Shown: piece by piece, positions 13,949 through 51,053 of the stretch | Numbering within the stretch: position 1 is the stretch's first letter | Layout of the letters: each line of letters begins with the position of its first letter | IMG/VR virus record: IMGVR_UViG_3300027759_000046 | Span: 124,001 to 188,000 of that record | Strand: one strand, 5' to 3' | DNA: 64,000 bases | Made by a program: the position numbers and the translations under genes | Notes under the pieces: model-generated | Databases searched by the model: none | Told to the model about the DNA's origin: nothing | Seen by the model: the letters and a program-made list of their open reading frames with translations, nothing else

Positions 13949-13991
13949 GTTATTTATAAATCTATTATACCAACTTTTTGAAAAAAGGTTT
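13949..13991 (-). promoter_or_regulatory. Tandem promoters for the tRNA operon: class II (AAACC-N17-TATAAT) and T4-late-like TATAAATA
   Basis: TATAAT at 13964-13969; TATAAATAAC at 13949-13958. Confidence 0.65.
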
Positions 13992-14577
13992 AGCTATTTT
14001 TTTCAATGATGTAAATTACATCAGAATAAATTTGTTCCATGTCTAATTCGCTTGCTCCCAAATGTTCAAGTGAAAATCCGTGATCTGGTACCAATTCATT
14101 GAATTCTCTAGACGGTCCACTACGCTCAAAAAATTCGCCATGGACCATGATTTCGCCAGATCTTAGAATTTCAAGCCTGAGTTGTGCATAAATTTGCTCC
14201 CAGTTGTATTCCATTTGTTGACGGCATGCATCTTCGTATTCGTAATCAGTCATTTGACCGTCTTCATTGTCGATTAGACTCTCTTGACCAAGCATCTCAA
14301 TTGCATCAGCTTGCGAACCTGTACTCAATACTTCTTCGTCAAACGTAGTTGAAAACCAATTCGCTAAATCGTAATCGTAATCAAAACCAGATTGAGCAGA
14401 CGTCAACAAGTCATCTTGTGATATCCAGATTGAAGACTCGCCGCTCTCTTGTGCAAGCTTAGCAGCTCGATGCGTTAGTCTAACTAGATCAGACGTCAAT
14501 CCCAAATCAGCAAGACGCCCTAGTCGATCTTCGTTTTCGGTTATGAATTCGTTAAATCTTTTAAGGGACCTCTTCAT
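13990..14577 (-). CDS. Acidic protein with capsid-targeting-like N-terminus and RLxxLGL tag
   Basis: MKRSLKRFNEFITE-NEDRLGRLADLGL. Confidence 0.75.
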   Translation of the reverse strand: MKRSLKRFNEFITENEDRLGRLADLGLTSDLVRLTHRAAKLAQESGESSIWISQDDLLTSAQSGFDYDYDLANWFSTTFDEEVLSTGSQADAIEMLGQESLIDNEDGQMTDYEYEDACRQQMEYNWEQIYAQLRLEILRSGEIMVHGEFFERSGPSREFNELVPDHGFSLEHLGASELDMEQIYSDVIYIIEKNS

Positions 14578-15237
14578 TTAGTATCGGCGTAATTTGGCCA
14601 ATGCTCTCTTAGCCTCTTCACCGCGCTGACGAATTTGATCTTTCTCTTCTTGTGACATGTTCTTGTATTGAGCATGAGTCGGATCATCTCCCCAACGTTC
14701 TAAGTGCTCCATATCTCTAACCCATTGTGTGTAATTACTAACTAAATCTTCAATGCTATCTCCTTCTTCGTTACGACCGTTTCGGTATGGGTAGTTAGAG
14801 TAACTGCCTCTTTTACGAAAGCCGTACTCATACAATTCGTCGTTTGGCTCGTATTCGTCCTCGTCATAGTATATGTCGGCTGGATCAAATCGCTCTTGTA
14901 CTGCTCTAGTAAAGGCAGTATCCTTTTGTAAGAAATCAATCGCTGCATCAATTTCAGCCTGATCGTTTGTTTCAACGTATTCATCTCCTTCAGCTACCGC
15001 CAATTCAATGTCAACGATTGTAAAATCTGAAATTCCGTAGAAGTCTCCAAGTTCATGGAATCCATGGCCTTCTTCTCTTTGGGATGGTGTGTATTCTGTT
15101 TCGCCTTCTACTTCAGCCGTGCAAATGTAATCACGACCGTCCATTGTGAATTCAAACTCGCTAATTGTAATAGTGTGAGATCTGCCGTGTCTAGATTCGT
15201 TTACGAATTGGCCGAATTTTGCTACAAAGTTCTTCAT
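14578..15237 (-). CDS. Acidic protein with capsid-targeting-like N-terminus
   Basis: MKNFVAKFGQFVNE. Confidence 0.75.
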   Translation of the reverse strand: MKNFVAKFGQFVNESRHGRSHTITISEFEFTMDGRDYICTAEVEGETEYTPSQREEGHGFHELGDFYGISDFTIVDIELAVAEGDEYVETNDQAEIDAAIDFLQKDTAFTRAVQERFDPADIYYDEDEYEPNDELYEYGFRKRGSYSNYPYRNGRNEEGDSIEDLVSNYTQWVRDMEHLERWGDDPTHAQYKNMSQEEKDQIRQRGEEAKRALAKLRRY

Positions 15238-15255
15238 TAAATAGTATCTTTCTTG

Positions 15256-15516
15256 TTATTTATCCAAGACTCGGTTCACTACTTCGATAGAAACATGCCC
15301 GTCTGCTAAATCCTTTTTAATTTTAACAGTCATTTCGGAATGACCTCTAATGAATAGAACATCGTCAACTACATCCTGTAAATCGTCAGAGCATAATTTC
15401 GGATGTACTATTCCAGGTTGGTAAGGATCAGTCTCAATCTTCTCGGTGAATTCTGCCAGCAGTCTTTTTAATTCCGCTTGCTCAGCCTTGCTTCTTAATT
15501 CTGAACCCTTTAACAT
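15256..15516 (-). CDS. Hypothetical protein
   Basis: 86-aa ORF in operon. Confidence 0.7.
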   Translation of the reverse strand: MLKGSELRSKAEQAELKRLLAEFTEKIETDPYQPGIVHPKLCSDDLQDVVDDVLFIRGHSEMTVKIKKDLADGHVSIEVVNRVLDK

Positions 15517-15517
15517 A

Positions 15518-16171
15518 TTATCCTACGTATTTTGCAAAGTTAACGGCTGCTTCTTGAGCCTCTTCGTATGTCTTGATTGTTTTAGAACCGCGAAGCCTAA
15601 ACGGAATGTGACCTACTGCCCATTCATTTAGGGTCTGGCCTTCTGGGATTGTGTCCAAGTGTTTTGTGAAGTACCTTTCGTATTGCAATAGATCTTCGTC
15701 AGCTGGAACCCAGCTTGCATCAAATAATTTATCGCCCTTACCGAAAGCTTGTGCAGCTCGGTGTGAGTAGCCAACCCATTGTTTAGTTGCTTTCTTCCAG
15801 GCAGTATGCGTGTGTGTTCCCTTCTTGGCAATAAGGCCAGCTGTATAGTACCAGTGACCTCTTGCAAGATCACCAACGTATCCTCCGTCTGGGTGCATGC
15901 ATGAGTTAGGCAAAGTATATGAATCTCCTTCTGGTCCAAACACATGATCTTCAACCAAAAGGCCTGTTGTATTACGAATAGTCTCGATCACTTCAGGGTT
16001 TGGAATAAACTCAAAACCTTCTTCAGTTTTAGTTGAATAAACTCGACTTACTAATTTAGTAAAGCCTAGATTTATATGTACTCGATTTAATCTACTTGTA
16101 CCTGAGTACTCTGGATACTTTTCAAATTTTAACTTGATTTTGCCTAGATACGGCGTGTGATTTTTAATCAT
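15518..16171 (-). CDS. Hypothetical protein
   Basis: 217-aa ORF, WVGYSHRA motif. Confidence 0.75.
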   Translation of the reverse strand: MIKNHTPYLGKIKLKFEKYPEYSGTSRLNRVHINLGFTKLVSRVYSTKTEEGFEFIPNPEVIETIRNTTGLLVEDHVFGPEGDSYTLPNSCMHPDGGYVGDLARGHWYYTAGLIAKKGTHTHTAWKKATKQWVGYSHRAAQAFGKGDKLFDASWVPADEDLLQYERYFTKHLDTIPEGQTLNEWAVGHIPFRLRGSKTIKTYEEAQEAAVNFAKYVG

Positions 16172-16191
16172 CTCTTTTATTTGTTTTTAGT

Positions 16192-16279
16192 TGGCGGAAG
16201 ATGTAGGATTCGAACCTACGGTACCTTGCAGTACAACAGTTTTCAAGACTGCCGCGATCGACCACTCTGCCAATCTTCC
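16192..16279 (-). tRNA. tRNA-Ser(TGA)
   Basis: GCAGT CTTGAAA ACTGT; long variable arm; CCA encoded. Confidence 0.95.
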
Positions 16280-16295: not shown

Positions 16296-16580
16296 TTAAT
16301 TAGTTGAGGCGGTTGTTGCTTTAGTATTACGAACCGACGCAATTGATTTGTTTTTAAACTCAGCCATCTCTTTTGAGCTTACCCAAAGAATTGTTGGACA
16401 AGTGCCGTCCCATTGTGGATCGCTCTTCCAAATCGAAAAAGTCAATTTTGAAAGCTGATCGTCTGTTACTAGATACAGAGTATCCTTTGTAGTTGTTGGC
16501 TGAGCAAAATCAGCGTATTCAGTAGTTTGCCCAAAACCTAGCAATGGACTAAACAATAATGCGAATAAGAATGTTTTCAT
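16296..16580 (-). CDS. Secreted hypothetical protein
   Basis: Signal peptide MKTFLFALLFSPLLGFG. Confidence 0.7.
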   Translation of the reverse strand: MKTFLFALLFSPLLGFGQTTEYADFAQPTTTKDTLYLVTDDQLSKLTFSIWKSDPQWDGTCPTILWVSSKEMAEFKNKSIASVRNTKATTASTN

Positions 16581-22994: not shown

Positions 22995-23014
22995 CTAAAT
23001 TACGTTTTTTAACA

Positions 23015-29651: not shown

Positions 29652-31340
29652 TTAGTAACCGTAGTCGTCTTCGTCGTCTTCTGAATAGTTCTTGTTGTCC
29701 CAAGTGTATTCAAGATCGTCAGTATCGTGGTTGCGAGTAATACCGTATTCTCTTTCATATTCACGAGCGTTCTCTGAATAGAAATCCCATAGACCCATTG
29801 CATCGTCTTCATGATGAATCGAATCCATGTAATCTTTGTATTCTGCTCTAAGCATCCTCATGAATTCGGAGAGAGTTGTTGCCTTTGGATCGTCAACCAA
29901 TCCCAATTGCTTAAGGCGTCCAATATTGTTTTGACGATTCTCTTTTAACATCTGTGAAAGTCTTTCAACCTCTTTAAAGTCTCTAGCATCGAGTGCTTGA
30001 TCAATTAGATCTTGGATCTCAGTCTGACTAAGTTCTCTATCTTCCGGCTCTTCAGCTTGGAAGCTTGGGAAATCCTGATCTTCAGGTTCTTCAGCATACT
30101 GATCTTCAGCATACGGATCTTCGTAATTAGCAGAGTCAACTGAGTCTTGCCAATCCTGAAGTTCTTGTTTAATTATTTGAATCAGCTTACGAACTTTGAC
30201 TTGAGCCTTTGGCATAGCCTCTTCAGCCGCAGTGATTTCAGCCTCAGTGTATTGAGGCTCTCTTTCGCCTGGCGTTCTGTATAATGGAGCCGCTGTAAAT
30301 ATTAAATTCATTAGCTCAAGGAATTCTTTGTCAGGTATTAGATTTGCATCAATCATTTTACCCCAAACGTATTCACGACCATTTTCAATATCATCAACTT
30401 CCGAAAAAGACTGGATAAAATCTCTAAGATCTGCTGCGGTTAATTTAGCACGCTTTAGGTCTTGAACCTCGTCTTGTGCAGTATCAGTATTCATAAATAC
30501 TTTAGCAATAACTTCATCACTAAGATGTGCAAGACCTCGCTGATTAATTATTCCGTAAATTGCCTTGATTGCCTCGTGGAATAGCATTGCCTGGTCTAGA
30601 CCCAAAATGGTTAAAGTTGGAGAAGTTTGAACCTCCTCAGCGGAGTCTTCAGTCTCTTCAGACTCTTGCTCTTCTTCTTGCTCTTCCTTTGCTTTAATTG
30701 GTTTCCATTCAATCTTAGATATTCCGCTTAATCCATCGCCCATTTCAATCATGCGAGCGCCTACCTCTTCTGGGATTCTCCAGTCGCGAGCATTACAAAT
30801 ATCAGTAATCATAACCAATAGCTCAACCATCTTGTTGGCATTGGCTTCGCCGAATAGTTGAGTTAATCCATTTACGTTAGTATCGCCCATTAACATCTTC
30901 TTGGAATTAATGGCCTCGCCTTGCGCAATCATGTTCATGATCTTACGCTTGTAAATTGCATTCTTTGTATCTTCGTCTTCAATATCTTTAAACGATGGCA
31001 TCTCCGGTTTTTCATCAGATTTTTCCTGATCCATCTTTTGTTTCATTTCACGTTGGTCGGTCGGGATTCTGATGTCTAATTCGGTGCCTTCTAAAATTAG
31101 TCCGTATTTTTCCATGATAACTTCTCGAGTTAGATCCTCAATCTGTTTCTCTTTACCGCGTTGCATCATCTGTACTTGACCAACGGCTCTCATTAAAGAG
31201 CCCATGTCGCGACCGTATTTGGCCTCAACCTCTCTTGCGCTCTGTTCAGCACGTTGATTTAAGGAATTTAAGTATTCTGGCGAAATCGCGGGATTACCCT
31301 TGATATCCGCTTCGTTTAAGAATTGTTTAAAGCTCTTCAT
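29652..31340 (-). CDS. Large acidic protein with capsid-targeting-like N-terminus
   Basis: MKSFKQFLNE; internal LKE-NRQNNIGRLKQLGLVDD. Confidence 0.8.
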   Translation of the reverse strand: MKSFKQFLNEADIKGNPAISPEYLNSLNQRAEQSAREVEAKYGRDMGSLMRAVGQVQMMQRGKEKQIEDLTREVIMEKYGLILEGTELDIRIPTDQREMKQKMDQEKSDEKPEMPSFKDIEDEDTKNAIYKRKIMNMIAQGEAINSKKMLMGDTNVNGLTQLFGEANANKMVELLVMITDICNARDWRIPEEVGARMIEMGDGLSGISKIEWKPIKAKEEQEEEQESEETEDSAEEVQTSPTLTILGLDQAMLFHEAIKAIYGIINQRGLAHLSDEVIAKVFMNTDTAQDEVQDLKRAKLTAADLRDFIQSFSEVDDIENGREYVWGKMIDANLIPDKEFLELMNLIFTAAPLYRTPGEREPQYTEAEITAAEEAMPKAQVKVRKLIQIIKQELQDWQDSVDSANYEDPYAEDQYAEEPEDQDFPSFQAEEPEDRELSQTEIQDLIDQALDARDFKEVERLSQMLKENRQNNIGRLKQLGLVDDPKATTLSEFMRMLRAEYKDYMDSIHHEDDAMGLWDFYSENAREYEREYGITRNHDTDDLEYTWDNKNYSEDDEDDYGY

Positions 31341-33012
31341 TTGTTAGCATTTTAAGTCTTTTTATTACGTCGTCTGCTTCAGCCTTTGCTGGTTCAGGTT
31401 GTTTGAATGGTTGTTTGGTTGGGATTGGACTCGGTCTGCTTGGTGTAGAAGGACGAGTCGCTGGTTTGGTTGGAGCAGGTTTAGTAGTTGGCTTAACTGC
31501 AGGCTCTGCTGCCCAATACTCAACGATCTGATCAAAATCTTCTGGTTCAATTGACTCCATTACGGCATCAACGTCTCCTCGGTTTAGACCAAGTTCTCTG
31601 AGTACATCGTTTTCCTGCGCCAAGATATTTCTAACTTGCGGGAATACTAGACTTGGATCCTCCTTTGCAATCAAGTTTACCTCAGCGAAAATTGAAAGAG
31701 TTGAGTCGATAATTGCCTGAATATCTTGATCACTAGCCTCAGCTAAGAGCATCTTAACTAATTGAGCAGAGAATTTAGAGAGAACTCCTTGATCCTTGTA
31801 CATTTTCAAGACCTGATCTTGAGTTAAGTTTTCTTTAATACGAGTATCAACAATATGTAAAACAATATTTAAGGAATCTTGGTTTGCAGCTGGATCAACT
31901 AGATAACTCTGTTTAATAATATTAAATAGGAGCTCAACTGGTTTTGTTTTATCTAATTTAAGATCGTAAACTACTTTCTTAACCATCATTTCAGTTGCAA
32001 GCTCTTGCACAACATTTGACACCAAAGCTTGTGGATATCCCAATTGAGTAAGGTGCTCAGTTGGATCGCTTGATTTCATAATGTGTCTGTCGTTAATGTC
32101 ATGAGAGGTTCTAACTTTACCATTATAGTAAACAGTTGTTCCTGTCAAGAAGAGAGGATCGCTTGGATCTGTACCGAAATTAAAAATATTTAATTGAACT
32201 GCATCACTTGCATAACTTGAGAAAGAACCACGGTTAATACACCAGTTTGCAACTGCGCATAATTTCTTTTGTGCATTCTCTGTACGCATGCTCATTACCA
32301 AGTACTGTTCGTCTGAATAGATTACTCCAGCCTCAGGTTCAAGCTCTTCAAGCTCTTTAACCTTTTTGCTTAGGCCAAGGTTTGCGAATCCTTTAACGTA
32401 GTTTGCAGTGTATTCTAAAACTTGTTCAATTGTCCAAGATGACATTGCCTTGATCTTTGCAAAGAGTCGACCGATTGCGCTTTCACCAAGCTCTTTTAAT
32501 TGAATAGCTAGAGTAATTGCCTCCTTCTTTCTCTCTCCGTCTAGTGCACGATATTGATCTCTTAAAGTTCTTGGCAGAGATTCCATAAACCATTTCGCGT
32601 CTTTTGCTCGCTCCATTGTTCGAAGTTCGTCCATTAACTGTTCAAAACCTTGGATACCATTAACTGGTTCAAGGTTTGCCCATTGATCAATTGGAATCGT
32701 TAACTGCTGTATCAAGTGTTTTTTAGTCTTTACGATCTCCAATAATGAGGTTAGGTCTTGGATCGTTGCTCCATGATCGAAATGGAATTTGATAAATGGC
32801 ATTGCATATCCTGGATAAGCCTTAACTAGATTAAGTATTTGTAGATAAGCTGGCTCAGTTAAAGCCTTGTCTCTCTCCTCTGGAGTTAACGCATTTGGGT
32901 CTTTACGCAATCTTTTCGCGTATCTCTTTTGCATATAGATCTTGGCTGCAGAGATGTTCTCATTAAGAGAGTGTCCAGCCAACCAGTTACTAAATGATTC
33001 TACTATTCTCAT
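31327..33012 (-). CDS. Large protein with CTS-like N-terminus and Pro/Thr-rich tail
   Basis: MRIVESFSNWL...LNE; KPAPTKPATRPSTPSRP. Confidence 0.8.
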   Translation of the reverse strand: MRIVESFSNWLAGHSLNENISAAKIYMQKRYAKRLRKDPNALTPEERDKALTEPAYLQILNLVKAYPGYAMPFIKFHFDHGATIQDLTSLLEIVKTKKHLIQQLTIPIDQWANLEPVNGIQGFEQLMDELRTMERAKDAKWFMESLPRTLRDQYRALDGERKKEAITLAIQLKELGESAIGRLFAKIKAMSSWTIEQVLEYTANYVKGFANLGLSKKVKELEELEPEAGVIYSDEQYLVMSMRTENAQKKLCAVANWCINRGSFSSYASDAVQLNIFNFGTDPSDPLFLTGTTVYYNGKVRTSHDINDRHIMKSSDPTEHLTQLGYPQALVSNVVQELATEMMVKKVVYDLKLDKTKPVELLFNIIKQSYLVDPAANQDSLNIVLHIVDTRIKENLTQDQVLKMYKDQGVLSKFSAQLVKMLLAEASDQDIQAIIDSTLSIFAEVNLIAKEDPSLVFPQVRNILAQENDVLRELGLNRGDVDAVMESIEPEDFDQIVEYWAAEPAVKPTTKPAPTKPATRPSTPSRPSPIPTKQPFKQPEPAKAEADDVIKRLKMLTNEEL

Positions 33013-33014
33013 CT

Positions 33015-33893
33015 TTATTGTTGTAGCTTTTTTATGTGGTCATTAATTTGGTCAATGGCAGATTGAGTATCAAATTTTAATCGAGTGTCCATCTTTAAAT
33101 CAGCTGCTCTTAATTTTAAAGTATACGATTTAAGCATTAAATTAAGATACTCAAGCCTATTCATTCTATAAAGCGGCTGTGCTTGATTTGATAATTCCTT
33201 TGCCTGTATAAGTAGGTTGTCCGCTTCAGTACGAGTAGGTGCAGTCTTCTTCTTTACATTGTACTTCCATTCAGTCGGTTCAGGATAGAGAGTAGCATGT
33301 TCAAAGTCTATTTTTTCTGAAGCCCATAGCATTGCAGTATTAAAGAAATCTGCAGTTGAGGTCACTTCTCTAAACTTTTTGATCTCAATATTCATTGATC
33401 CTAATCCGCCTCTTCTACTCCATATACCGACATTAATTCCTTTAGGCGTCATACGTCTAATTACTTTAGGGCCAGGAAAGAATCCAATACCCCAACCGTC
33501 TTTGACACGATAGTTTGGGTCTAACGAAAATACTACAGTTCCATTCATCAACTGTCTTGGACTTGAAACCATGTGTAGACCTTTGGCGAAAAGAGCCTTT
33601 GCTCCATCAGAGCCAAGGCCAGCTAAAGTATTAATACCTGATAATTCACCAAGGTTTTTTAAGATTTCCAAATCTTCCTGTTCTTTATAATTAAGCTTGA
33701 GCCCTTTAACTAATCGCTGATATGCGCTAACGATCTTTTTAAATTCGTCTTTATAACCTGAATCGTCAATTAAGCCCAAGTCAACAAGTCGTTTAAGATT
33801 AATAGCTGTCTTGCCAAGACCGGTCGCTTGAGACTCAGCGTCTGTGATATCTCTATTCTCGGAAATGTATTGAGCAAATTTAAGTAGTTTCAT
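33015..33893 (-). CDS. Protein with CTS-like N-terminus and RLxxLGL tag
   Basis: MKLLKFAQYISE...KRLVDLGLIDD. Confidence 0.8.
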   Translation of the reverse strand: MKLLKFAQYISENRDITDAESQATGLGKTAINLKRLVDLGLIDDSGYKDEFKKIVSAYQRLVKGLKLNYKEQEDLEILKNLGELSGINTLAGLGSDGAKALFAKGLHMVSSPRQLMNGTVVFSLDPNYRVKDGWGIGFFPGPKVIRRMTPKGINVGIWSRRGGLGSMNIEIKKFREVTSTADFFNTAMLWASEKIDFEHATLYPEPTEWKYNVKKKTAPTRTEADNLLIQAKELSNQAQPLYRMNRLEYLNLMLKSYTLKLRAADLKMDTRLKFDTQSAIDQINDHIKKLQQ

Positions 33894-33895: not shown

Positions 33896-34663
33896 TTAAA
33901 AATCTTCGCTTCCCATTTTTGTTTGCGGGTCAGAATAGATTGCGGAATAGGCATTTGAACCTGCGTCTATCAATCTTTCTAACCAACCTGTATTTCTGAG
34001 TCTCTTGAAAACAAGATTCTCTATTGAGAACTCGCCGTCTTTTGCAAGACCGTCTTTACGAGCTTTCATAATTTTTTCTTTTAAGACTTTGACACGATCG
34101 GCTAAGCCTCTAGCATCTTCAGAATCAGATCGCTTGATCATCTTCTCAATCTCTTCGATCTCAGTCATAAATGCTTCAGCTTTTCTAGATACATCTTGCG
34201 GATCAACGGTTGGCGGATTCCATTTAGGTTTTACAATCCATTCAGCTTTGAGTAGAGAATAGAGACCTGATGCAATGTGGGGTTCATTCACGTCCTGCGC
34301 ATAGAGCTCAACGTCATGTCTGCGAATCACGACTGGGTGTCGCAAGTTCCAAACGAAACGCTGACCGTCCAGCCCTTTCTTTACTAGCTCTGTGTCCTCG
34401 CTAATCTGCGAGAAGTCTAGTAGCACGTGAACGTCTAAGTCCGAGTTCTCGGTCCAAGTGTAGTTCGCAATTGAGCCAGTTAATTGAATATCGGAGATTG
34501 GAACTTCAATCTTAAGATCTGTGTAGAAATCGTCTGCAATCTGCAGAAGTTTCGTTCTAACCTCCGGATTAAACTCTTCACCGTTCCAAAATGCTGGATG
34601 CAAGCCCTTTTGATAGAACTCGCTCTCATTTATAAAATCTGTAAATTTGTTTAAATATCTCAT
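33896..34663 (-). CDS. Pol-beta-superfamily nucleotidyltransferase with CTS-like N-terminus
   Basis: MRYLNKFTDFINE; LTGSIAN...SDLDVH (GS-DxD); VELY. Confidence 0.8.
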   Translation of the reverse strand: MRYLNKFTDFINESEFYQKGLHPAFWNGEEFNPEVRTKLLQIADDFYTDLKIEVPISDIQLTGSIANYTWTENSDLDVHVLLDFSQISEDTELVKKGLDGQRFVWNLRHPVVIRRHDVELYAQDVNEPHIASGLYSLLKAEWIVKPKWNPPTVDPQDVSRKAEAFMTEIEEIEKMIKRSDSEDARGLADRVKVLKEKIMKARKDGLAKDGEFSIENLVFKRLRNTGWLERLIDAGSNAYSAIYSDPQTKMGSEDF

Positions 34664-34687
34664 CAGGTTTATTTATTCCAGAAAATC

Positions 34688-40030: not shown

Positions 40031-41380
40031 CTAAAGGTCAGATAGATTGGTCTCGGCCCATTCGGCCCAATTGCTGAATACGGTAGTTGGTTGCTGTTCT
40101 CTATTTTTGTAGATCAGCTCTACTTTTATGTCGATCTCGTCGTTCTGGTTGAGCTCAGAAAGTTTTGCGTTAATTTCAGGCTCAAGAATATCAAGGCTCT
40201 CAACTGGCCCACGGCAGCTGAATTTAACGTGATTTACTGGATCCGTATATCGTAGGCTGTACGGCATAAACACGGTTAAATAGACACCAAGTTCTTTGGC
40301 TCTCTCCTTGATTTCGGTGTACATTCCCTTGAGCACTGTCAAGTATTTTAAACGGCCCTTACGTAGTTGGGAGATAGGGCCATCTACTACAACAGACAAT
40401 GCATTAATCTCAAACCCAGTTGGGTCCATTAGCCCTAGTCTAAATAGTCTAAGCTTTTGGTTAATTGAAGTAGATTCGTTTATCGGCTCTTCATCAATTA
40501 CCTCTCTAAGCCATGGATACCAAATTGAATCTGCTTGATACGGATATGCTTTGATTGGTGAAATGCCTGACATTGCAAGCTCAGGTAAATTACTGAATAC
40601 TTGAGCTGACCACTCAGGCATGTGCCATAGCCGGGAGCTAACTGTTTGATCGTCAGTTGACTTGCCGGCATAGGGCTTGGATTGTATTGACCTGCCAGCA
40701 TAGGAATTGGATTGTATTACTCCAAACCTCTTAACGAATTTTTTAAACTCTTTAAATTTAGCAGTATTGGTATGAGCCGGGAATCCCAGATCAGGATCAG
40801 TGGGCTCGCTCTGAGTTTCAATCTGAACCAGGTTAATTCGGCCAGTTAGACCCAATCTGTCAAGTCTTTTCCACCTATTGAATTTTTCAATTGCGTCTTC
40901 TATTGAAGTTGCCTGCGTAGCGTGCTCAACTGACTCGTTAAGCTTGGGCTTCTGCATTGAGCCTGTACCGACCAGTTCACGAGTATATGGATCGTAGAAC
41001 TGACCCTCTTCTCGTAAGTGTAATAGATCCCATCTGCCAGCACGGGCCTCGCGAATTAGGTGATCAAATATTTCGTCAGAGTCTCCTTCTTGACCAAACC
41101 ACTCTTTCCAATCTGACCAAATATCGTCAATACTCTCCTGCCAACCATCATGGTTGTCGCTAACTGGCCAGTTATCGTAATCGTACAGAGTAAATAGTGG
41201 ACCCTGTGCTACGTAATGATCTTTGTGCTTGGTGTCTGCGAAATCATCTAATGATTCCCAGTGTACAGTAACGCTCAGCACTTTTAAACCTGAGTCAGAG
41301 AGACCTAACTGTACCAGTCTAAACTTCTTCTTTGCAGTAGACGGCTGATGTAGATCTTCGTATAGTTTAAGGTACTTCAA
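40031..41380 (-). CDS. Three-module protein with CTS-like start and three RLxxLGL tags
   Basis: TTG start; LYE...RLVQLGL; LNE...RLDRLGL; INE...RLFRLGL. Confidence 0.75.
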   Translation of the reverse strand: MKYLKLYEDLHQPSTAKKKFRLVQLGLSDSGLKVLSVTVHWESLDDFADTKHKDHYVAQGPLFTLYDYDNWPVSDNHDGWQESIDDIWSDWKEWFGQEGDSDEIFDHLIREARAGRWDLLHLREEGQFYDPYTRELVGTGSMQKPKLNESVEHATQATSIEDAIEKFNRWKRLDRLGLTGRINLVQIETQSEPTDPDLGFPAHTNTAKFKEFKKFVKRFGVIQSNSYAGRSIQSKPYAGKSTDDQTVSSRLWHMPEWSAQVFSNLPELAMSGISPIKAYPYQADSIWYPWLREVIDEEPINESTSINQKLRLFRLGLMDPTGFEINALSVVVDGPISQLRKGRLKYLTVLKGMYTEIKERAKELGVYLTVFMPYSLRYTDPVNHVKFSCRGPVESLDILEPEINAKLSELNQNDEIDIKVELIYKNREQQPTTVFSNWAEWAETNLSDL

Positions 41381-41390: not shown

Positions 41391-41768
41391 TTATATTTTA
41401 TAGAAATGAATGCCTGTTACTGGATTAATGTCCGCAACTCCTTTTGCTGCTTTTTGTAAAATATCGCTAACTTGCGAGAACGTGATTTTTTGTGGATCAA
41501 CACCGCCTTCAACATATCGGTTGAAGATTAGATCGCCATTTGGCTTCTTCACAAGATCTCTAAAATTTAGATCGTATGTCTGAACTAGCGCTGACCCAAC
41601 TACTCTGTATTTTCGAGTAGTATTGTTTGCAGTGATCGCAACAACGTTCTGCTTACCGCCCGATGTGTCCTTCTTCATGGTTGCATCAAGCGGATTTGAA
41701 TAGGTTATTGCGGTCGCCGTTGAAACTGATTCAGAGTCTTCGTATAGTTTAAGGTACTTCATAGTCAT
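41391..41768 (-). CDS. Protein with CTS-like N-terminus
   Basis: MKYLKLYE; shares the 23-nt DNA TGAAGTACCTTAAACTATACGAA with the 41380 gene. Confidence 0.75.
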   Translation of the reverse strand: MTMKYLKLYEDSESVSTATAITYSNPLDATMKKDTSGGKQNVVAITANNTTRKYRVVGSALVQTYDLNFRDLVKKPNGDLIFNRYVEGGVDPQKITFSQVSDILQKAAKGVADINPVTGIHFYKI

Positions 41769-42529: not shown

Positions 42530-42571
42530 TATCTGTATTATTTAAAATCGTATAGAGTTATTTATCTAACC

Positions 42572-43846: not shown

Positions 43847-43861
43847 TCATGCTTAATTATT

Positions 43862-44848: not shown

Positions 44849-44860
44849 TCATGATTGGCG

Positions 44861-45319
44861 TTATTTTGTCTTCTTCACATTGGCCCAAGACTTGCTTGGA
44901 CTTGCCGCATTTACTCTGGCCATTGCCCATTGGTGAGCCGTCATACCAGGTCTTGAACCTGAAGAATAGAACGCGCCCAGTCCCTTGGCATATTCCCGTT
45001 TAAGATCTGCAAACGAGTAACCTTTCTTGGTTGCAACCTTTCTGATCTTAGCAAGAGTCTCTTTGCTTAGCTTGGCCTCATTAACTTGACTGTCCTTGCG
45101 TGGAGTGTTCTTCCAACCCGATTTACTACGCTCCTGTTTTTCCATCTCATCTCTAAGACGGTACGCCGCCTGAGCATCTCCCTTCTTAAGTAGATCCTTG
45201 GCCTTGTCCAGCTTCTTGTCTCGTGAGCTGCCTTCCGGTGCTTTGTAGATTGCAGGATTCTCTGACTTCTTTTCGGTAATCGGTAACTGCCAGTTTTCAA
45301 ATAGTTTAATGTGCTTCAC
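44861..45319 (-). CDS. Basic protein with CTS-like N-terminus (DUF5824-like C-domain)
   Basis: MKHIKLFENW; KGLGAFYSSGSRPG...QWAMARVN. Confidence 0.65.
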   Translation of the reverse strand: MKHIKLFENWQLPITEKKSENPAIYKAPEGSSRDKKLDKAKDLLKKGDAQAAYRLRDEMEKQERSKSGWKNTPRKDSQVNEAKLSKETLAKIRKVATKKGYSFADLKREYAKGLGAFYSSGSRPGMTAHQWAMARVNAASPSKSWANVKKTK

Positions 45320-45334
45320 TTAGCGTAGATAATT

Positions 45335-47565: not shown

Positions 47566-47609
47566 GGTAAGTCTATTATACCAAATATTGGGGAAAAGGT
47601 TATTGCAGA

Positions 47610-48434
47610 CTAGGCAGTCTTAACGATATCAGCTAGGGTCTTGGCTCTAGCGCCGACCTGTTTCGCCCAGTCCGAGTTTAGCATCTCCGATGAGGCAGCA
47701 CTGAAATTTTGTTGTTTGATTTGGGCTAGAAAGTTCGTGAAGGCCGAGAGACCCTTTTTACCAAGATTGAAAACCATTTCGGTTATAACTCCCTGCACGG
47801 CAGGCGGTAGAGAAGGTAGAGTTGGCACAAGCTCCTGTGCATCAGCCTTGGCCTGACCAAGATCGGTCAGTAGCAGCGAGTCTATTTGGGCCTGAGTTAA
47901 TGATGAGGTTCCGGCCTTGATCTTTTCGGGATTGGCTCCAACCTTTTTTAGTTGGGCAACAGCGTCTTCACGGTTAAGATTGAAACCTACACCAACTGTT
48001 GGAATCTGCCTGGAGTCTAGATACTTAACGGGCTTGGAACCCTCATGACGGATAACTCGGTCCTTGATTGAGGCAATGATTGGGTCGGTCGTTGGCGGCG
48101 GTGCAGTAAACGAATTCAGGTACCGTTCGGCCCCAATGGTCTTGACGTGGGTCATGATCTGATTACGGAAGCCAGAGTCCAGGATTCCAAGCTCGCCGTT
48201 GACCGCGTCGCCCACACTTGGATAGGCCCATGCTCTCTGCTGATCGTCATGCCCTGCCTTTAGGGCCTGATTGACCTTGACAAAAGAGGCAGCATCCGGA
48301 ATCTGGCGGATTGCCGAGACCAGACTCTCCTCGTCCGTGCCGAGTCCTGAGACTGCGGTCTGAATCTGTGCTGCCAGCTGGTCAGCAGTCGCGGCCTCGT
48401 TTAGCCAGCTCTCAAATAGGTTAATGTGTTTCAT
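47610..48434 (-). CDS. CTS-like peptide + annexin-like repeat + T4-type (GH24) lysozyme
   Basis: MKHINLFESWLNE; AVSGLGTDEESLV...SVGDAVNGELG; RHEG...YLD...PTVGVGFN...EMVFNLG...SDWAKQVGARA. Confidence 0.85.
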   Translation of the reverse strand: MKHINLFESWLNEAATADQLAAQIQTAVSGLGTDEESLVSAIRQIPDAASFVKVNQALKAGHDDQQRAWAYPSVGDAVNGELGILDSGFRNQIMTHVKTIGAERYLNSFTAPPPTTDPIIASIKDRVIRHEGSKPVKYLDSRQIPTVGVGFNLNREDAVAQLKKVGANPEKIKAGTSSLTQAQIDSLLLTDLGQAKADAQELVPTLPSLPPAVQGVITEMVFNLGKKGLSAFTNFLAQIKQQNFSAASSEMLNSDWAKQVGARAKTLADIVKTA

Positions 48435-48453
48435 TGTTAATAGTTGTCTGTGA

Positions 48454-48918
48454 TTAGCGAGCGTATCGCTTCAAGGTCTGTGCTGCCGCAGCTGGCGTCA
48501 CGTTGCGCCAAGTAACTCGGTTTGAAATCTCCTGTGCCAAGTCGTCGATCGTCATGCTCTGATCTTGCATGAATCTGTCAACAAGCTCTGCAACCTCTTC
48601 GCTGCCACGGTTGAAGTACTCGTCTGCTAGCACCATCTCCAAATTATCTGGACGGTTGCGGTACTTTGCTGCGGTCTGAGCATTACGACCTCCGTTAACA
48701 TCAGCCTCGCGCCAGTCTCTAGTACGAGCCGAGACCCTGTCAAAACGATCGCGATCAGCGGGTTTCATGGCCTCGTAATCGTCCACTATATCTAGCAGGT
48801 CCTGGTACGAGCCATCGTCCGCGCCACTACTATGGCTGTGGGCTCTACGCAGTAGGTCATGGGCTGGGTTGCTGCCCTCGGCTAGGAATTCGGTAAAGCG
48901 TTTAACTTGTGTCTTCAT
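48454..48918 (-). CDS. Protein with CTS-like N-terminus
   Basis: MKTQVKRFTEFLAE (compare T4 IPIII MKTYQEFIAE). Confidence 0.8.
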   Translation of the reverse strand: MKTQVKRFTEFLAEGSNPAHDLLRRAHSHSSGADDGSYQDLLDIVDDYEAMKPADRDRFDRVSARTRDWREADVNGGRNAQTAAKYRNRPDNLEMVLADEYFNRGSEEVAELVDRFMQDQSMTIDDLAQEISNRVTWRNVTPAAAAQTLKRYAR

Positions 48919-48942
48919 CTGTTAATATTTGTTTTTATCTGA

Positions 48943-49473
48943 TTATTTATCTAAATCTGAGTCCAGCATATAGGCTGCATCGTGGTCTTCGCCTCTCCAC
49001 CAGACTGCACGGGCTCCGCTGCGTTGGTCAAGCCAAACCTCAAGGTCAATCGAGCCAAAGTTCTCTTGCGCAATGATCTCAGCGGACTCGGCCTGCACAA
49101 GATCTTGCTGGTCATCGAGCGCAAAGAGACCGGGTAACGAGCGCACGAGCGCCTTGAATCTGGGCATGTCGTGCCAGGTCGTTGCAGTTGTATTGAAGAC
49201 CTCGACCACCTGTTCCAGAGGTAGAACCTGCAGTACGGCGGCCTGATCCGCCAAGCCAAGCGCCTGCAGTCGAGCCGCAGCCGGGCCAAGCTCAAGGCCC
49301 AGCACCTTGCACGCCCACAGAGCGGAGTCAACCGTGTCCAGATAGTAGTTGACATCGTTGTCCAGCTGGACGGCCATCAGCTCTTCCGAAAAGTTATCCG
49401 GATTGACGACATCTCGGAGCGTTGCAATATCGTGCTCACGCGCGTAGTTCTCAAATAGTTTAAGGTGCTTCAT
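48943..49473 (-). CDS. Protein with CTS-like N-terminus and RLxxLGL tag
   Basis: MKHLKLFENY; ARLQALGLAD; late promoter at 49477-49486. Confidence 0.75.
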   Translation of the reverse strand: MKHLKLFENYAREHDIATLRDVVNPDNFSEELMAVQLDNDVNYYLDTVDSALWACKVLGLELGPAAARLQALGLADQAAVLQVLPLEQVVEVFNTTATTWHDMPRFKALVRSLPGLFALDDQQDLVQAESAEIIAQENFGSIDLEVWLDQRSGARAVWWRGEDHDAAYMLDSDLDK

Positions 49474-49573
49474 GCTTTTATTTATTCGATAGGTAGACCC
49501 GGTTCCAGGCCTTTTCGAGCCTCAAGACTCCGGTGCGCGCCCTACAACAATTAGGTAAAGATACCCAGTCTAC

Positions 49574-49666
49574 TTATACTAGAAAAAAGATAAAGATACA
49601 AGACAACACTACAGCCAGACCTATAGGCCAGACCCAACTCCATTCTATCTTACAAGTTCTTTTCAT
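49574..49666 (-). CDS. 30-aa membrane peptide (not in ORF track)
   Basis: MKRTCKIEWSWVWPIGLAVVLSCIFIFFLV after GAGTATATTAG. Confidence 0.45.
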   Translation of the reverse strand: MKRTCKIEWSWVWPIGLAVVLSCIFIFFLV

Positions 49667-49698
49667 AAGCCTAATATACTCTATACCCGGTAACCGGG

Positions 49699-49879
49699 AC
49701 TAGGGAGTACCTGGCAACCTGACCAGCCTCCAGACCCTATAGACCCAGACACGGGACTAGGGAGTAACCCCGAACCCTGAGCCAGACCCCAGACTCGCCT
49801 GACCCCGATGGGACTAGGGAGTGCCGGGCAGCCAGCCGCCCTTGGGGTACCTGCTCGGCCTGCTTAAACACTAGGGAGT
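49699..49879 (+). repeat. Array of four ACTAGGGAGT sites at exact 57-bp period
   Basis: Starts at 49699, 49756, 49813, 49870; 47-bp intervening sequences diverged. Confidence 0.95.
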
Positions 49880-50013
49880 ACGGTGACCCCCTCGGCCTCG
49901 CCGGAAACTCTGGACTCCAGGGTCTCGCGGGGCCGGGGATGCCGAGACTATAGGGACTGGACGGGACATGGGGATCCGCGGAGTCTCGGCAGACCGGGTA
50001 TAAATAAGTCTAT

Positions 50014-50682
50014 ATGGAAACACGCGATACACAAGACGGAGCCGAGGATAACAGAGATTACCTTGCGCCCGGCCACGGACCTACTGGCAATCTGGTCTAT
50101 AAGAAAGATGCAGCTCGGTACCTAGGTATAAGCCTTAAGACTCTAGAGCGCTATGTGAAACAGGGTCTGGTCAAGCCCTTTAAGAACGAGGTAAACGGCC
50201 GAACCTACTTTGACCAGCTGGATCTACTAGCCTTACTAGGGAGTAGACTACCCCAAGAACGAGAGGTTGTGCTGTACTGCCGGGCTGCGGGGATTCCGGA
50301 TCAGGGTAAAGCCGGCGTATCCAGCCAGGCCAGACTGCGAGACCAGGTAGACCGCTGTACCGAGTACTGTACCAAGGCTGGGGTCCGGGTCGATCGTATA
50401 ATCCAAGAGATTGGAAAGGGGCACACCCTGAATGGTCGCAGCGGGATTGACCAATTGCTGGATTTAGTGTTCCGAAAGAAGGTATCAATGATCGTGATCG
50501 AGTGCCCGGATCGTCTGGCTCGTTGGGGCATGGGCGAGGTCTTGGAGAGATTCCTGACCTGGCACGGTGTAGAGCTGCATGTTATAAACAAGGGCTGGTC
50601 ACGTGCCGAATTCCGCGAAGAGGTAAAAGAAGATCTTGCGGGAATCCTATTCGAGGCGAAACGCCTGCTAGGAGAAGCTTAA
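50014..50682 (+). CDS. IS607 TnpA-like serine recombinase (HTH + resolvase fold), catalytic Ser apparently lost
   Basis: AARYLGIS.KTL.RY...G HTH; YCRAA in place of YxRVS; EIGKG...GR; DRLARWG; no adjacent tnpB; promoter TATAAATA at 49999-50006. Confidence 0.85.
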   Translation: METRDTQDGAEDNRDYLAPGHGPTGNLVYKKDAARYLGISLKTLERYVKQGLVKPFKNEVNGRTYFDQLDLLALLGSRLPQEREVVLYCRAAGIPDQGKAGVSSQARLRDQVDRCTEYCTKAGVRVDRIIQEIGKGHTLNGRSGIDQLLDLVFRKKVSMIVIECPDRLARWGMGEVLERFLTWHGVELHVINKGWSRAEFREEVKEDLAGILFEAKRLLGEA

Positions 50683-51053
50683 CTAAATATTGTTGGATTA
50701 CGGCGGCCCCATTCTCTGAGCAAGACGCCAGCCTGGGAGTTTGCCTCGTTCTCTATGTCAGATCCGTCGGCACCGTCCAAGACCTTGCCGCTGTCGCGCT
50801 GATGATGGTGTACCAATTCATGGGCCAAGGTTCTGTACCAGTCTGCACGGACTCTGGTTCCGCGAAGAACCCAGATCTCATTGGACTGTGGATTAAAGTA
50901 TCCCATTGACTTATTTAACATAGCCTCCCTATGGTCATCAGAAATGTGGATCGTTGGGGTGCTGGTCCAGCCTAACTGCTGACGACAGAAGTGTACGAAC
51001 TCCTCTAATTCGGAGTCTTCCTGCCATTCACGGGATTCTTTAATGTATTTCAT
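50679..51053 (-). CDS. HExxH metallopeptidase-like protein with CTS-like start
   Basis: MKYIKE; TLAHELVHH...E.EAN..AG; late promoter at 51057-51066. Confidence 0.75.
   Translation of the reverse strand: MKYIKESREWQEDSELEEFVHFCRQQLGWTSTPTIHISDDHREAMLNKSMGYFNPQSNEIWVLRGTRVRADWYRTLAHELVHHHQRDSGKVLDGADGSDIENEANSQAGVLLREWGRRNPTIFS

What the first reader, a model, noticed from the sequence alone, without database searches (positions are those of the whole stretch)
13990..51053. At least 13 unrelated proteins carry a T4 capsid-targeting-like N-terminal peptide
Seen: starts such as MKRSLKRFNEFITE, MKNFVAKFGQFVNE, MKSFKQFLNE, MKLLKFAQYISE, MRYLNKFTDFINE, MKYLKLYE (twice), MKHIKLFENW, MKHINLFESWLNE, MKTQVKRFTEFLAE, MKHLKLFENY and MKYIKE, many behind ATAAATA late-type promoters. 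The genes starting at 41380 and 41762 share 23 identical nt in the tag only. Known: the T4 IPIII CTS is MKTYQEFIAE, and gp21 cleaves after (I/L)xE. Inference: a portable DNA cassette converts diverse enzymes (NTase, lysozyme, peptidase) into head-packaged, injected cargo.
Basis: partly seen in the sequence, partly recalled or inferred. Interest (0 to 1): 0.7.

Follow-up and report, generated by a model that had tools for sequence, protein, structure and literature searches.

The report
Capsid-targeting tags on phage cargo proteins
An uncultured 253-kb T4-like jumbo phage puts a short T4-style "pack me into the head, then cut me off" peptide on about 25-35 unrelated proteins, roughly ten times more than T4, so its probable packaged protein cargo can be read from the genome.

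Summary
All listed N-termini exist at the stated places. Genome-wide (253,137 bp), 23-24 ORFs start with [LI]K.[FY]..[FW][ILV].E, against about 0.2-1.6 expected, and about 37 fit a looser form against 4.9 expected.

The proteins are unrelated beyond the tag. A matrix built only from these tags picks T4 ipII and ipIII as top hits in T4. It finds nothing in Tenacibaculum phage PTm1, and only 1-3 hits in KVP40, P-SSM2 and T4. The four conserved positions are those mapped in the T4 CTS: residues 4 and 7 for targeting, 8 and 10 for cleavage.

The phage has a T4-type capsid protein and an S77 prohead protease with conserved His and Ser. Its scaffold carries 7-10 repeats, Y..Y[LIV].E, that resemble the tag. 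The capsid propeptide ends in a conserved [LIV].E.

Tags are conserved on orthologues, in 120 metagenomic homologues and in a 462-kb huge phage. Tagged genes sit behind ATAAATAA late-type motifs.

The "portable DNA cassette" idea fails: synonymous codons vary freely, and only one gene pair shares 25 nt. Packaging, cleavage and injection remain inferred. This is a much enlarged natural version of the known T4 CTS system.

The parts
13990..14577 (-). Tagged ORF, 195 aa, MKRSLKRFNEFITE|N (strong tag). No known family.
   Evidence: PWM 25.2 bits. No Pfam or PHROG hit. Second gene of a two-gene run behind the motif at 15256.
14578..15237 (-). Tagged ORF, 219 aa, MKNFVAKFGQFVNE|S (strong tag).
   Evidence: PWM 20.9. 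The orthologue in relative G001 keeps the tag, MKNFVANFGQFVNE.
15256..15263 (-). ATAAATAA late-promoter-like motif ahead of the 15237->13990 gene pair.
29652..31340 (-). Tagged ORF, 562 aa, MKSFKQFLNE|A. The 10-residue tag has the same layout as T4 IPIII MKTYQEFIAE.
   Evidence: PWM 26.5. The G002 orthologue (68% identical) starts MKSFKTFLNE. No family found.
31327..33012 (-). Probable tagged ORF, 561 aa, MRIVESFSNWLAGHSLNE|N. The cleavage site lies further from the start, as in T4 IPI.
   Evidence: Matches the loose pattern. It lies inside the four-gene cargo run. No family found.
33015..33893 (-). Tagged ORF, 292 aa, MKLLKFAQYISE|N.
   Evidence: PWM 19.6. No family found.
33896..34663 (-). 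Tagged nucleotidyltransferase, 255 aa, MRYLNKFTDFINE|S.
   Evidence: PF01909 above its cut-off. In the AF2 model (pLDDT 85), residues 1-15 score below 50 and lie outside the fold. The fold resembles ANT/KNTase/CD-NTase enzymes only weakly. 96 of 120 metagenomic homologues keep a tag.
34669..34676 (-). ATAAATAA motif ahead of the four-gene cargo run 34663->29652.
40031..41380 (-). Variant-tag ORF, 449 aa, TTG start, (M)KYLKLYED.
   Evidence: Shares 25 identical nt with the next gene's start, with unrelated flanks.
41391..41762 (-). Variant-tag ORF, 123 aa, MKYLKLYED. An alternative ATG at 41768 would give MTMKYLKLYED.
42558..42565 (-). ATAAATAA motif ahead of the run 42529->40031, which holds one untagged gene and then the two MKYLKLYE genes.
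44861..45319 (-). Variant-tag ORF, 152 aa, GTG start, (M)KHIKLFENWQLPITE|K. Carries a DUF5824 domain.
   Evidence: It lies downstream of the tail-collar-domain gene 45335-45787, which has the motif at 45812.
47610..48434 (-). Tagged T4-type lysozyme, 274 aa, MKHINLFESWLNE|A. A stretch of about 115 unassigned residues separates the tag from the GH24 domain.
   Evidence: PF00959, residues 129-267. The G002 orthologue (59-61% identical) starts MKHLKIFESWVNE.
48454..48918 (-). Tagged ORF, 154 aa, MKTQVKRFTEFLAE|G.
   Evidence: PWM 20.9. ATAAATAA motif at 48943-48950.
48943..49473 (-). Variant-tag ORF, 176 aa, MKHLKLFENYARE.
   Evidence: Motif at 49478-49485.
50679..51053 (-). Doubtful tag, 124 aa, MKYIKESREWQED. 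Metallopeptidase-like.
   Evidence: The DUF6782 hit (23.1 bits) is below the 27-bit cut-off. PWM is low. Motif at 51058-51065.

Best explanation
The peptides are capsid-targeting sequences of the T4 kind.

**Proposed mechanism**
- Each tag is a 10-16-residue amphipathic N-terminal peptide. Two aromatic residues three apart ([FY]..[FW]) provide affinity for the scaffolding core of the prohead.
- The following [ILV]-x-E is the cutting site of the phage's S77 (gp21-type) prohead protease.
- Tagged proteins are made late, together with head proteins, and are enclosed with the scaffold as the shell assembles.
- The protease, made as the N-terminal part of a protease-scaffold polyprotein, cuts after the Glu. 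This frees the cargo from its tag while the scaffold is cut at its own Y..Y[LIV].E repeats.
- The mature cargo stays in the head with the DNA and probably leaves it at infection.

**Probable cargo:** cell-wall hydrolases, a nucleotidyltransferase, a small Lys-rich repeat protein encoded next to the capsid gene, and many ORFans.

**Shown:** the motif and its enrichment, conservation and co-occurrence with T4-type head genes and late-type motifs.

**Inferred:** binding to the scaffold, cleavage, presence in virions and ejection.
For: 1. **Enrichment at N-termini only.** 24 against 1.6 expected; PWM >= 12 gives 23 N-terminal against 3 internal hits.
2. **Cross-validation.**
   - The PWM, built from this genome alone, scores T4 ipII and ipIII at 15.1 bits and ipI at 7.0. 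These rank at the top of 271 T4 ORFs.
   - It finds 0 of 317 ORFs in phage PTm1.
3. **Functional positions.** The conserved positions equal T4 IPIII residues 4 and 7 (targeting) and 8 and 10 (processing), as mapped experimentally (PMC9026906). The shortest tags (MKSFKQFLNE, MKTFSQFINE) have the same 10-residue layout.
4. **Head machinery.**
   - MCP PF07068, E = 9e-43.
   - S77 protease PF03420. His84 and Ser139 align to T4 gp21 H85 and S140 and are invariant in 30 relatives.
5. **Same motif where the protease is expected to cut.**
   - The scaffold has 7-10 repeats of Y..Y[LIV].E, conserved in 12 relatives.
   - These repeats hold 9 of the 71 best internal PWM scores out of 60,869 positions, p = 5e-10.
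   - The MCP propeptide ends in an invariant [LIV].E in 22 relatives.
6. **Selection on the peptide.**
   - Tags are 76% identical between orthologues, against 58% for the next 15 residues and 60% for the rest.
   - They are kept at 31-33% overall identity and in 96 of 120 homologues of the NTase.
   - Synonymous codons vary freely.
7. **Late-type motif.** ATAAATA lies upstream of 21 of 41 tagged genes against 38 of 292 others. It also precedes the protease-scaffold gene and structural genes. There is a weak gp55-like sigma hit.
8. **Tag outside the fold.** In the NTase model, residues 1-15 have pLDDT below 50.
9. **Lineage trait.** Strong hits number 14 in relative G001, 16 in G002 and 14 in the 462-kb phage LR756500.
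Against: - There are no protein-level data: no virion proteome, N-terminal sequence or cleavage assay exists for this uncultured lineage.
- The MCP site aligns about 20 residues from where T4's cut would fall, so the site assignment is plausible but not proven.
- The KLFE/KLYE variants and MKYIKE lack parts of the motif.
- A few loose matches are surely chance, for example a thioredoxin and a helicase.
- Head-packaged peptidoglycan hydrolases are unusual for T4-type phages, whose cell-puncturing lysozyme sits in the baseplate.
- PTm1, a relative with the same fused protease-scaffold, lacks the motif. The tag is therefore not obligatory for this head type.
Confidence: 0.75

Rival explanations
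1. A recombination 'cassette'. The shared starts are remnants of repeated DNA-level duplication or gene conversion of a leader segment that shuffles genes. The peptide itself has no function.
For: The adjacent genes starting at 41380 and 41762 share 25 identical nt confined to the start. The chance of all eight codons matching, given the same peptide, is about 1e-3. Cargo genes lie in different orders and islands in relatives.
Against: Across 23 tags, synonymous codons are used at genome-typical ratios, and mean identity is 17.6 of 33 nt. The four key residues persist while other tag positions vary in 120 homologues. They also persist in a phage whose MCP is only 38% identical and whose GC content is 24%. 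This is peptide-level purifying selection.
Confidence: 0.05
2. A protease-removed propeptide that is not a head-targeting signal. For example, it could be a zymogen-type inhibitory N-terminus, or a signal for another assembly such as the tail, baseplate or membrane. The proteins would then act inside the producing cell or in the periplasm rather than being packaged.
For: Several tagged proteins are cell-wall enzymes: lysozyme, CHAP, VanY and a PG-binding protein. These need access to the periplasm. Tagged genes are interspersed with tail-fibre-like genes, for example the Collar and Laminin_G_3 genes at 42833-45787.
Against: The tags have no hydrophobic core, so they are not secretion signals. 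The motif matches the scaffold repeats and the capsid propeptide boundary, and in T4 phages the gp21-type protease acts only inside proheads (PMC9026906). A separate untagged GH19 endolysin with a neighbouring small membrane protein (a candidate holin) exists at 23015-23914. A Lys-rich repeat protein with the tag is encoded directly after the capsid gene.
Confidence: 0.12
3. A compositional or translational artefact. AT-rich, Lys-rich codons after the start are favoured for expression and happen to resemble the T4 CTS.
For: MK- starts are common in many genomes. The genome is 39% GC.
Against: The conserved positions are Phe/Tyr/Trp, Ile/Leu/Val and Glu at fixed spacing, not Lys. Controls of similar size and composition show no enrichment or little: PTm1 gives 4 loose matches against 4.2 expected, and KVP40 gives one strong hit. 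Only about 10% of ORFs carry the motif.
Confidence: 0.02

Closest known systems
[quoted passage not shown]
   Same: - An N-terminal peptide of 10-19 residues.
- Aromatic residues at positions 4 and 7, an aliphatic residue at 8 and Glu at 10.
- Cargo proteins are otherwise unrelated.
- A gp21/S77 protease, a gp23-type capsid and a late promoter of the TATAAATA type.
- The PWM from this phage recovers ipII and ipIII.
- Reviews already state that T-even internal proteins share only the CTS (PMC3012670; PMC9026906).
   Different: - 23-37 tagged proteins per genome, against 3-4 in T4 and 1-3 in KVP40 and P-SSM2.
- Cargo reaches 660 aa and includes recognisable enzymes.
- The scaffold carries a repeated tag-like motif that T4 gp22 lacks.
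- Protease and scaffold lie in one reading frame.
- Nothing has been shown experimentally.
Engineered CTS fusions in T4 (CTS-GFP, CTS-nuclease, CTS-beta-galactosidase; Mullaney and Black, as reviewed in PMC9026906)
   Same: A short CTS placed in front of an arbitrary enzyme is enough for packaging and delivery. The tagged lysozyme, NTase, CHAP and VanY proteins here look like natural equivalents.
   Different: These are natural genes whose packaging has not been measured.
T4 Alt (a head-packaged ADP-ribosyltransferase)
   Same: An enzyme carried in the head, processed by gp21 and ejected to modify host targets. It is a possible functional analogue of the tagged NTase.
   Different: The Alt propeptide (MELITE...) does not match the motif: PWM -11.9. 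There is no homology to the NTase.
Ejection and inner-body proteins of phiKZ, 201phi2-1 and SPN3US giant phages
   Same: Jumbo phages pack dozens of proteins into the head. A diverged gp21 homologue removes their propeptides after Glu (PMC9026906; PMC5694885).
   Different: Those sites are reported as a different short motif, with propeptides of varied length and no single N-terminal consensus. The capsid lineage is different. Here the motif is the T4 (L/I)-x-E type with an aromatic targeting half.
Tenacibaculum phage PTm1 (Shirahamavirus), the nearest cultured relative by MCP (28% identity)
   Same: T4-like MCP. An annotated fused 'prohead core scaffolding protein and protease'. A jumbo genome with a Bacteroidota host.
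   Different: No tag enrichment: 0 strong hits and 4 loose matches against 4.2 expected.

Membership tests
T4-type capsid targeting sequence (CTS) on head-internal proteins | A peptide at the extreme N-terminus, about 10-20 residues, on otherwise unrelated proteins | tested here: met
   Tags start at Met1 and end 10-16 residues later. BLAST of the bodies finds only 1 related pair among 41 proteins.
T4-type capsid targeting sequence (CTS) on head-internal proteins | Targeting residues equivalent to IPIII positions 4 and 7 (aromatic or hydrophobic, three residues apart) | tested here: met
   [FY]..[FW] is conserved in all strong tags, in orthologues and in 120 homologues. The definition comes from PMC9026906.
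T4-type capsid targeting sequence (CTS) on head-internal proteins | A gp21 processing motif (L/I)-x-E closing the peptide (IPIII positions 8 and 10) | tested here: met
   [ILV]-x-E is present in all 23 strong tags. It is incomplete in the KLFE/KLYE variants and in MKYIKE.
T4-type capsid targeting sequence (CTS) on head-internal proteins | Recognised by a model that also recognises the bona fide T4 CTS | tested here: met
   The PWM from this genome scores ipII and ipIII at 15.1 bits, at the top of 271 T4 ORFs, and ipI at 7.0.
T4-type capsid targeting sequence (CTS) on head-internal proteins | The phage has a gp21-family (S77) prohead protease with catalytic His and Ser, and a gp23-type capsid | tested here: met
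   PF03420 at 35.2 bits, above the cut-off. PF07068, E = 9e-43. H84 and S139 align to T4 H85 and S140 and are invariant in 30 sequences. That these are the catalytic residues rests on my recollection of the T4 literature.
T4-type capsid targeting sequence (CTS) on head-internal proteins | Late expression together with head genes | tested here: inconclusive
   Sequence only. The ATAAATAA motif is enriched upstream of tagged genes (p = 1e-7) and of head genes. There is a weak gp55-like hit. No transcript data were examined.
T4-type capsid targeting sequence (CTS) on head-internal proteins | Physical incorporation into proheads, removal of the peptide and ejection into the host | not testable with these tools
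   The lineage is uncultured. The complex prediction gave no verdict.
Sec, Tat or lipoprotein signal peptides | A hydrophobic core of about 7 or more residues after a basic N-region | tested here: not met
   Read directly from the sequences. The tags alternate K, N, E and Q with single aromatic residues, for example MKSFKQFLNE. True signal-like starts in the same genome look different, for example MKTFLFALLFSPLLGFG at 16296-16580.
phiKZ/SPN3US-type ejection-protein propeptides | Membership of the phiKZ-like capsid lineage and its own cleavage logo | tested here: not met
   The MCP is gp23-type. Its nearest relatives are T4-like huge phages, Lak phages and PTm1. The cleavage motif here has an aliphatic residue at P3, as in T4.

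The most novel reading that the evidence does not exclude
The tag may be a one-repeat mimic of the scaffold's 14-residue Y..Y[LIV].E repeat.
- Cargo would load by co-assembling with the scaffold helices and be released by the same cuts that dismantle the scaffold.
- This simple rule would have let a whole lineage of freshwater jumbo and huge phages (253-462 kb) build arsenals of 15-35 head-packaged, injected effectors.
- The effectors include cell-wall hydrolases and a nucleotidyltransferase.
- They would be exchanged between phages as islands. One example is the 52-56% GC island at 47-51 kb beside a serine recombinase.
Probability: 0.3. Interest if true: 0.75.

Novelty: new variant of a known kind. 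Interest (0 to 1): 0.6.

Why it matters
**What is already known.** The principle is established for T-even phages: a short N-terminal CTS plus gp21 cleavage loads diverse internal proteins into the head. The mechanism proposed here is therefore not new.

**What appears to be new.** I found no paper in the searched library that describes either of the following points.
- **Scale and content.** About one gene in ten of an uncultured jumbo-phage lineage carries the tag. Cultured T4-like phages of similar genome size carry one to three. The cargo includes large proteins and recognisable enzymes.
- **A readable rule.** The tag resembles the scaffold repeat, which suggests how the CTS is recognised.

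**Practical value.**
- The motif predicts the packaged and ejected proteome of uncultured huge phages from sequence alone.
- It flags about 30 ORFans per genome as candidate early-acting host-takeover or anti-defence proteins.
- It offers natural tag variants for T4-style protein-packaging vectors.

Tried and rejected
- **Complex prediction.** The protease-scaffold (alignment A1) against the tagged 119-aa head-module protein (A2) scored 0.00 and gave no verdict. It counts neither for nor against binding.
- **Family and structure searches.** Atlas searches of the 562- and 561-aa cargo proteins gave no usable lead. PHROGs gave only two unknown-function families. PDB sequence searches of the NTase and the 562-aa protein found nothing.
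- **NTase fold.** Foldseek placed it only loosely among ANT/KNTase/CD-NTase enzymes (TM about 0.25), so no specific activity is claimed.
- **'DNA cassette' hypothesis.** Rejected from codon analysis.
- **Paralogous family with a shared N-domain.** Rejected.
- **Loose matches rejected as chance:**
  - helicase at genome 122025-123761, MSKLKAEFEQFVKG;
  - thioredoxin-like protein at window 21003-21275;
  - probably the ATP-grasp protein at genome 222084-223208.
- **Nucleotide search of the phage collection** found no near relative.
- **MCP cleavage site.** I could not align it reliably to T4 Glu65/Ala66. Only residues 100-139 and 298-525 aligned.

Full report
**What the window is**

The window is bases 124,001-188,000 of a single 253,137-bp IMG/VR virus record, estimated 94% complete. 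The genome has these T4-type features:
- A gp23-type major capsid protein (PF07068, E = 9e-43; genome 62731-64410, minus strand).
- A gp21-family S77 prohead protease (PF03420, above its cut-off).
- Topoisomerase II subunit genes and 19 tRNA genes in the window.

No near relative exists among deposited phages at the nucleotide level. By capsid protein, the nearest records are uncultured huge phages (LR756500, 38.5% identity), Lak phages (about 32%) and Tenacibaculum phages PTm1, PTm5 and pT24 (about 28-30%). IMG/VR holds at least 135 contigs of the same lineage, at 61-76% MCP identity. Several of them are 250-271 kb long.

**Check of the observation**

- The 41380 gene starts with TTG.
- The MKHIKLFENW gene (44861-45319) starts with GTG.

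The feature is not confined to 13990-51053. The regex [FYLW]..[FWY][ILV].E occurs 24 times within the first ~16 residues of 333 ORFs. It occurs 37 times in 75,061 internal positions, which gives 1.6 expected and p about 5e-20.

I built a position weight matrix from 21 clear tags, covering the nine residues ending at the Glu plus one more. It gives 23 N-terminal hits at 12 bits or more, against 3 internal hits in 60,869 positions. This is partly circular for the training genome, so I ran controls.

| Genome | Strong hits (PWM >= 12) | Loose matches, observed / expected |
|---|---|---|
| This phage (G000, 253 kb) | 23 | 37 / 4.9 |
| Relative G001 (252 kb) | 14 | 29 / 4.0 |
| Relative G002 (270 kb) | 16 | 27 / 4.1 |
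| LR756500 (first 400 kb of 462 kb) | 14 | 32 / 7.8 |
| Tenacibaculum phage PTm1 (225 kb) | 0 of 317 ORFs | 4 / 4.2 |
| T4 | 3 | 10 / 3.4 |
| KVP40 (245 kb) | 1 | 11 / 4.4 |
| P-SSM2 (252 kb) | 2 | 8 / 3.1 |

The loose form requires two aromatic residues three apart, followed within 10 residues by [ILVM].E, all within the first 24 residues. I estimate about 25-32 truly tagged proteins, close to one gene in ten.

**Are the proteins unrelated?**

With the first 20 residues removed, an all-against-all BLAST of 41 candidates finds a single related pair. Most have no Pfam or PHROG family. The recognisable ones are:
- a nucleotidyltransferase (33896-34663, PF01909);
- a T4-type lysozyme (47610-48434, PF00959);
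- a CHAP peptidase, outside the window (genome 205353-205979);
- a VanY/M15 peptidase, outside the window (genome 203186-204436);
- a PG_binding_1 protein, outside the window (genome 202819-203193);
- a protein with a DxDGV motif that I read as HAD-type phosphatase-like, although Pfam finds no family (genome 43085-43660, MLKKFSQFINE);
- DUF5824 (44861-45319).

The in-window 'peptidase' (50679-51053) is only a sub-threshold DUF6782 hit, and its tag is the weakest of the set.

**Is it T4-CTS-like?**

The matrix contains no T4 information. In T4 it ranks ipII and ipIII (MKTYQEFIAE, 15.1 bits) and the small ORF 61.1 (MKTFKEFIKE) at the top of 271 T4 ORFs. IPI (MKTFKEF...ITE) follows at 7.0. Alt, gp67, gp68 and lysozyme e score negatively, while gp22 and gp24 score near zero (0.1 and 1.1).

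The review PMC9026906 reports the genetic mapping of the IPIII CTS. Targeting depends mainly on residues 4 and 7, and processing on residues 8 and 10. These are the four positions conserved here: [FY]4, [FW]7, [ILV]8 and E10. The shortest tags (MKSFKQFLNE, MKTFSQFINE) reproduce the 10-residue T4 layout.

Longer tags add residues between Met and the first aromatic. Some place the cleavage site further downstream, as T4 IPI does (MLKKFDEFNETLNE, MIKGFDQFTGKINE, MRIVESFSNWLAGHSLNE).

**The head machinery uses the same motif**

*Protease and scaffold*
- Protease and scaffold lie in one 660-codon frame (L006:4429-6411, minus strand).
- A TATAAATA motif precedes the frame, which starts with TTG.
- A second ATAAATAA motif lies ahead of the internal Met that starts the 425-aa scaffold.
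- The single frame is conserved in all 61 relatives examined and is annotated as a fusion in PTm1.
- Protease His84 and Ser139 align with T4 gp21 His85 and Ser140 and are invariant in 30 sequences.

*Scaffold repeats*
- The scaffold contains 7-10 tandem 14-residue repeats carrying Y..Y[LIV].E. This is the same arrangement of aromatic, aromatic, aliphatic and Glu as the tag.
- The repeats are conserved in 12 relatives.
- They account for 9 of the 71 best internal PWM scores out of 60,869 positions (p = 5e-10).
- T4 gp22 has no such repeat.

*Capsid propeptide*
- A conserved block...HNHAIFDN, is followed in all 22 relatives by an invariant [LIV]-x-E and then a linker of variable length. This is the expected look of a propeptide boundary.
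- For comparison, the T4 gp23 site reads FGSFLTE|A.

*Head-module cargo protein*
- A 119-aa protein encoded directly after the capsid gene carries the tag (..SYEEYLFE|KK).
- Its body is a Lys-rich repeat (K.V....MA.LPKGKG), reminiscent of the basic T4 internal proteins. It is conserved in 20 relatives.

**Selection acts on the peptide, not the DNA**

- Between orthologues in G000, G001 and G002, the tag is 76% identical. The next 15 residues are 58% identical and the rest of the protein 60% (p = 7e-7 and 3e-9).
- Tags survive where the body has fallen to 31-33% identity.
- Among 120 metagenomic homologues of the NTase, 96 score at least 6 bits. The four key positions hold while the others vary (MKLFKFTEFINE, MKHLKPYNQFLNE, MKSYVQSRSAWIAE).
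- Codons for Phe, Glu, Asn, Lys and Ile in the tags follow genome-wide usage, and mean pairwise identity is 17.6 of 33 nt.

The 'portable DNA cassette' is therefore not the general mechanism. The exception is the adjacent pair starting at 41380 and 41762. They share 25 identical nt with unrelated flanks, and the chance of eight identical codons given the same peptide is about 1e-3. That indicates one recent copy or conversion event.

**Timing**

- ATAAATA occurs 93 times in the genome, and 64 of these sites lie within 60 nt upstream of a same-strand start.
- ATAAATAA occurs 19 times in the window, against 6.0 in shuffles.
- It precedes the protease-scaffold gene, several large ORFs in the head and tail gene region of the genome, and the GH19 endolysin at 23015.
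- It lies upstream of 21 of 41 tagged genes, against 38 of 292 others (p = 1e-7).
- Every tagged window gene is either directly behind such a motif or downstream in the same-strand run (34669 -> 29652; 42558 -> 40031; 45812 -> 44861; 48943 -> 47610).
- A weak gp55-like sigma factor is present (E = 2.7e-4).
- This is sequence evidence only.

**Structure**

An AlphaFold2 model of the NTase, built from 42 sequences, has mean pLDDT 85. Residues 1-15 score below 50, and the confident fold begins after the tag. That fits a detachable leader. Foldseek places the body only loosely among ANT/KNTase/CD-NTase-type enzymes.

**Interpretation**

The best-supported reading is a T4-type CTS system, greatly expanded.
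- Shown: the motif and its restriction to N-termini; peptide-level conservation across a lineage from 253 to 462 kb; identity of the constrained positions with the experimentally mapped T4 positions; presence of the T4-type protease, scaffold and capsid; and the same motif at the scaffold and capsid sites.
- Inferred: binding to the scaffold, cleavage after Glu, residence in the mature head and ejection.

An untagged GH19 endolysin lies at 23015-23626 behind a late-type motif, next to a small membrane protein that is a candidate holin. The tagged wall hydrolases are therefore additional to the probable lysis enzyme. They may act during entry.

I rate the rival readings as follows:
- A DNA cassette without peptide function is unlikely.
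- A compositional artefact is unlikely.
- A protease-removed propeptide that targets something other than the head stays possible at about 10%.

**Comparison with what is known**

That T-even internal proteins are diverse and share only a CTS is textbook knowledge (PMC3012670). PMC9026906 suggests the CTS may be an evolutionary mechanism for loading varied proteins. Two literature searches found no description of a large CTS repertoire in T4-like jumbo or huge phages. A limited library cannot prove absence.

I therefore file this as a new variant of a known kind. The logic and key residues are the same. The repertoire is about ten times larger, the cargo includes large enzymes, and the scaffold carries a tag-like repeat.

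Noticed in passing
L006:4429-6411 (genome 64429-66411, minus strand; outside the window): The S77 protease and the scaffold lie in one 660-codon frame. It starts with TTG behind a TATAAATA motif. A second ATAAATAA motif precedes the internal Met that starts the 425-aa scaffold. The single frame is conserved in 61 related loci and is annotated as a fusion in phage PTm1.
   Followed up: partly
L006:4429-5706 (scaffold): The scaffold has 7-10 tandem 14-residue repeats, Y..Y[LIV].E....I., conserved in relatives. The repeats resemble the cargo tag. T4 gp22 has no such repeat.
   Followed up: partly
window 47000-51100: A GC-rich island of 49-56% GC in a 39% GC genome. It holds three tagged genes (including the lysozyme), the doubtful metallopeptidase-like gene and a MerR-HTH serine recombinase (50014-50682, plus strand; PF00239), which I read as IS607-like. 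The lysozyme orthologue in relative G002 has ordinary GC (39.6%). This suggests import of a cargo island from a higher-GC relative.
   Followed up: partly
window 11333-13732, 1798-1876 and 16192-16279: 19 tRNA genes on the minus strand, including three tRNA-Met. ORFs called in this stretch are artefacts.
   Followed up: yes
window 22986-24525 (plus strand): A probable lysis cassette: an ATAAATAA motif, an untagged GH19-type endolysin (23015-23626), a small membrane protein (23636-23914) and a 197-aa ORF.
   Followed up: partly
L141-L160 (LR756500.1, 462-kb uncultured huge phage, 24% GC): This phage carries the same tag system (consensus MKYIKxYxxF[LI]NE). There are 14 strong hits in the first 400 kb, and the protease lies in a 635-aa open frame.
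   Followed up: partly
L199:67-231 (T4 gene 61.1) and L200:144-1418 (P-SSM2 PSSM2_194): T4 gp61.1 (54 aa, hypothetical protein) starts MKTFKEFIKE and scores 16 bits. The P-SSM2 'cytidyltransferase' starts MKSFSQFLTE. Two more P-SSM2 ORFs start MKSFKQFLEE and MKSLSQFIIE. All are possible unrecognised CTS proteins in cultured phages.
   Followed up: no
genome 59552-60157 (residue 105) and 107444-108508 (residues 275 and 330): Strong internal matches to the tag motif (ARYQEFVNEN, SFDQFLNEC, YESYLNEC). They may be internal processing sites or internal starts.
   Followed up: no
window 42833-45787: Two paralogous Laminin_G_3 (concanavalin-like) proteins and a tail-collar-domain protein, all untagged, lie interleaved with tagged genes. 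They are likely fibre or receptor-binding genes.
   Followed up: no
window 38792-39388 and 35942-36694: A DUF2589 protein and a family-2 glycosyltransferase lie among the late genes.
   Followed up: no
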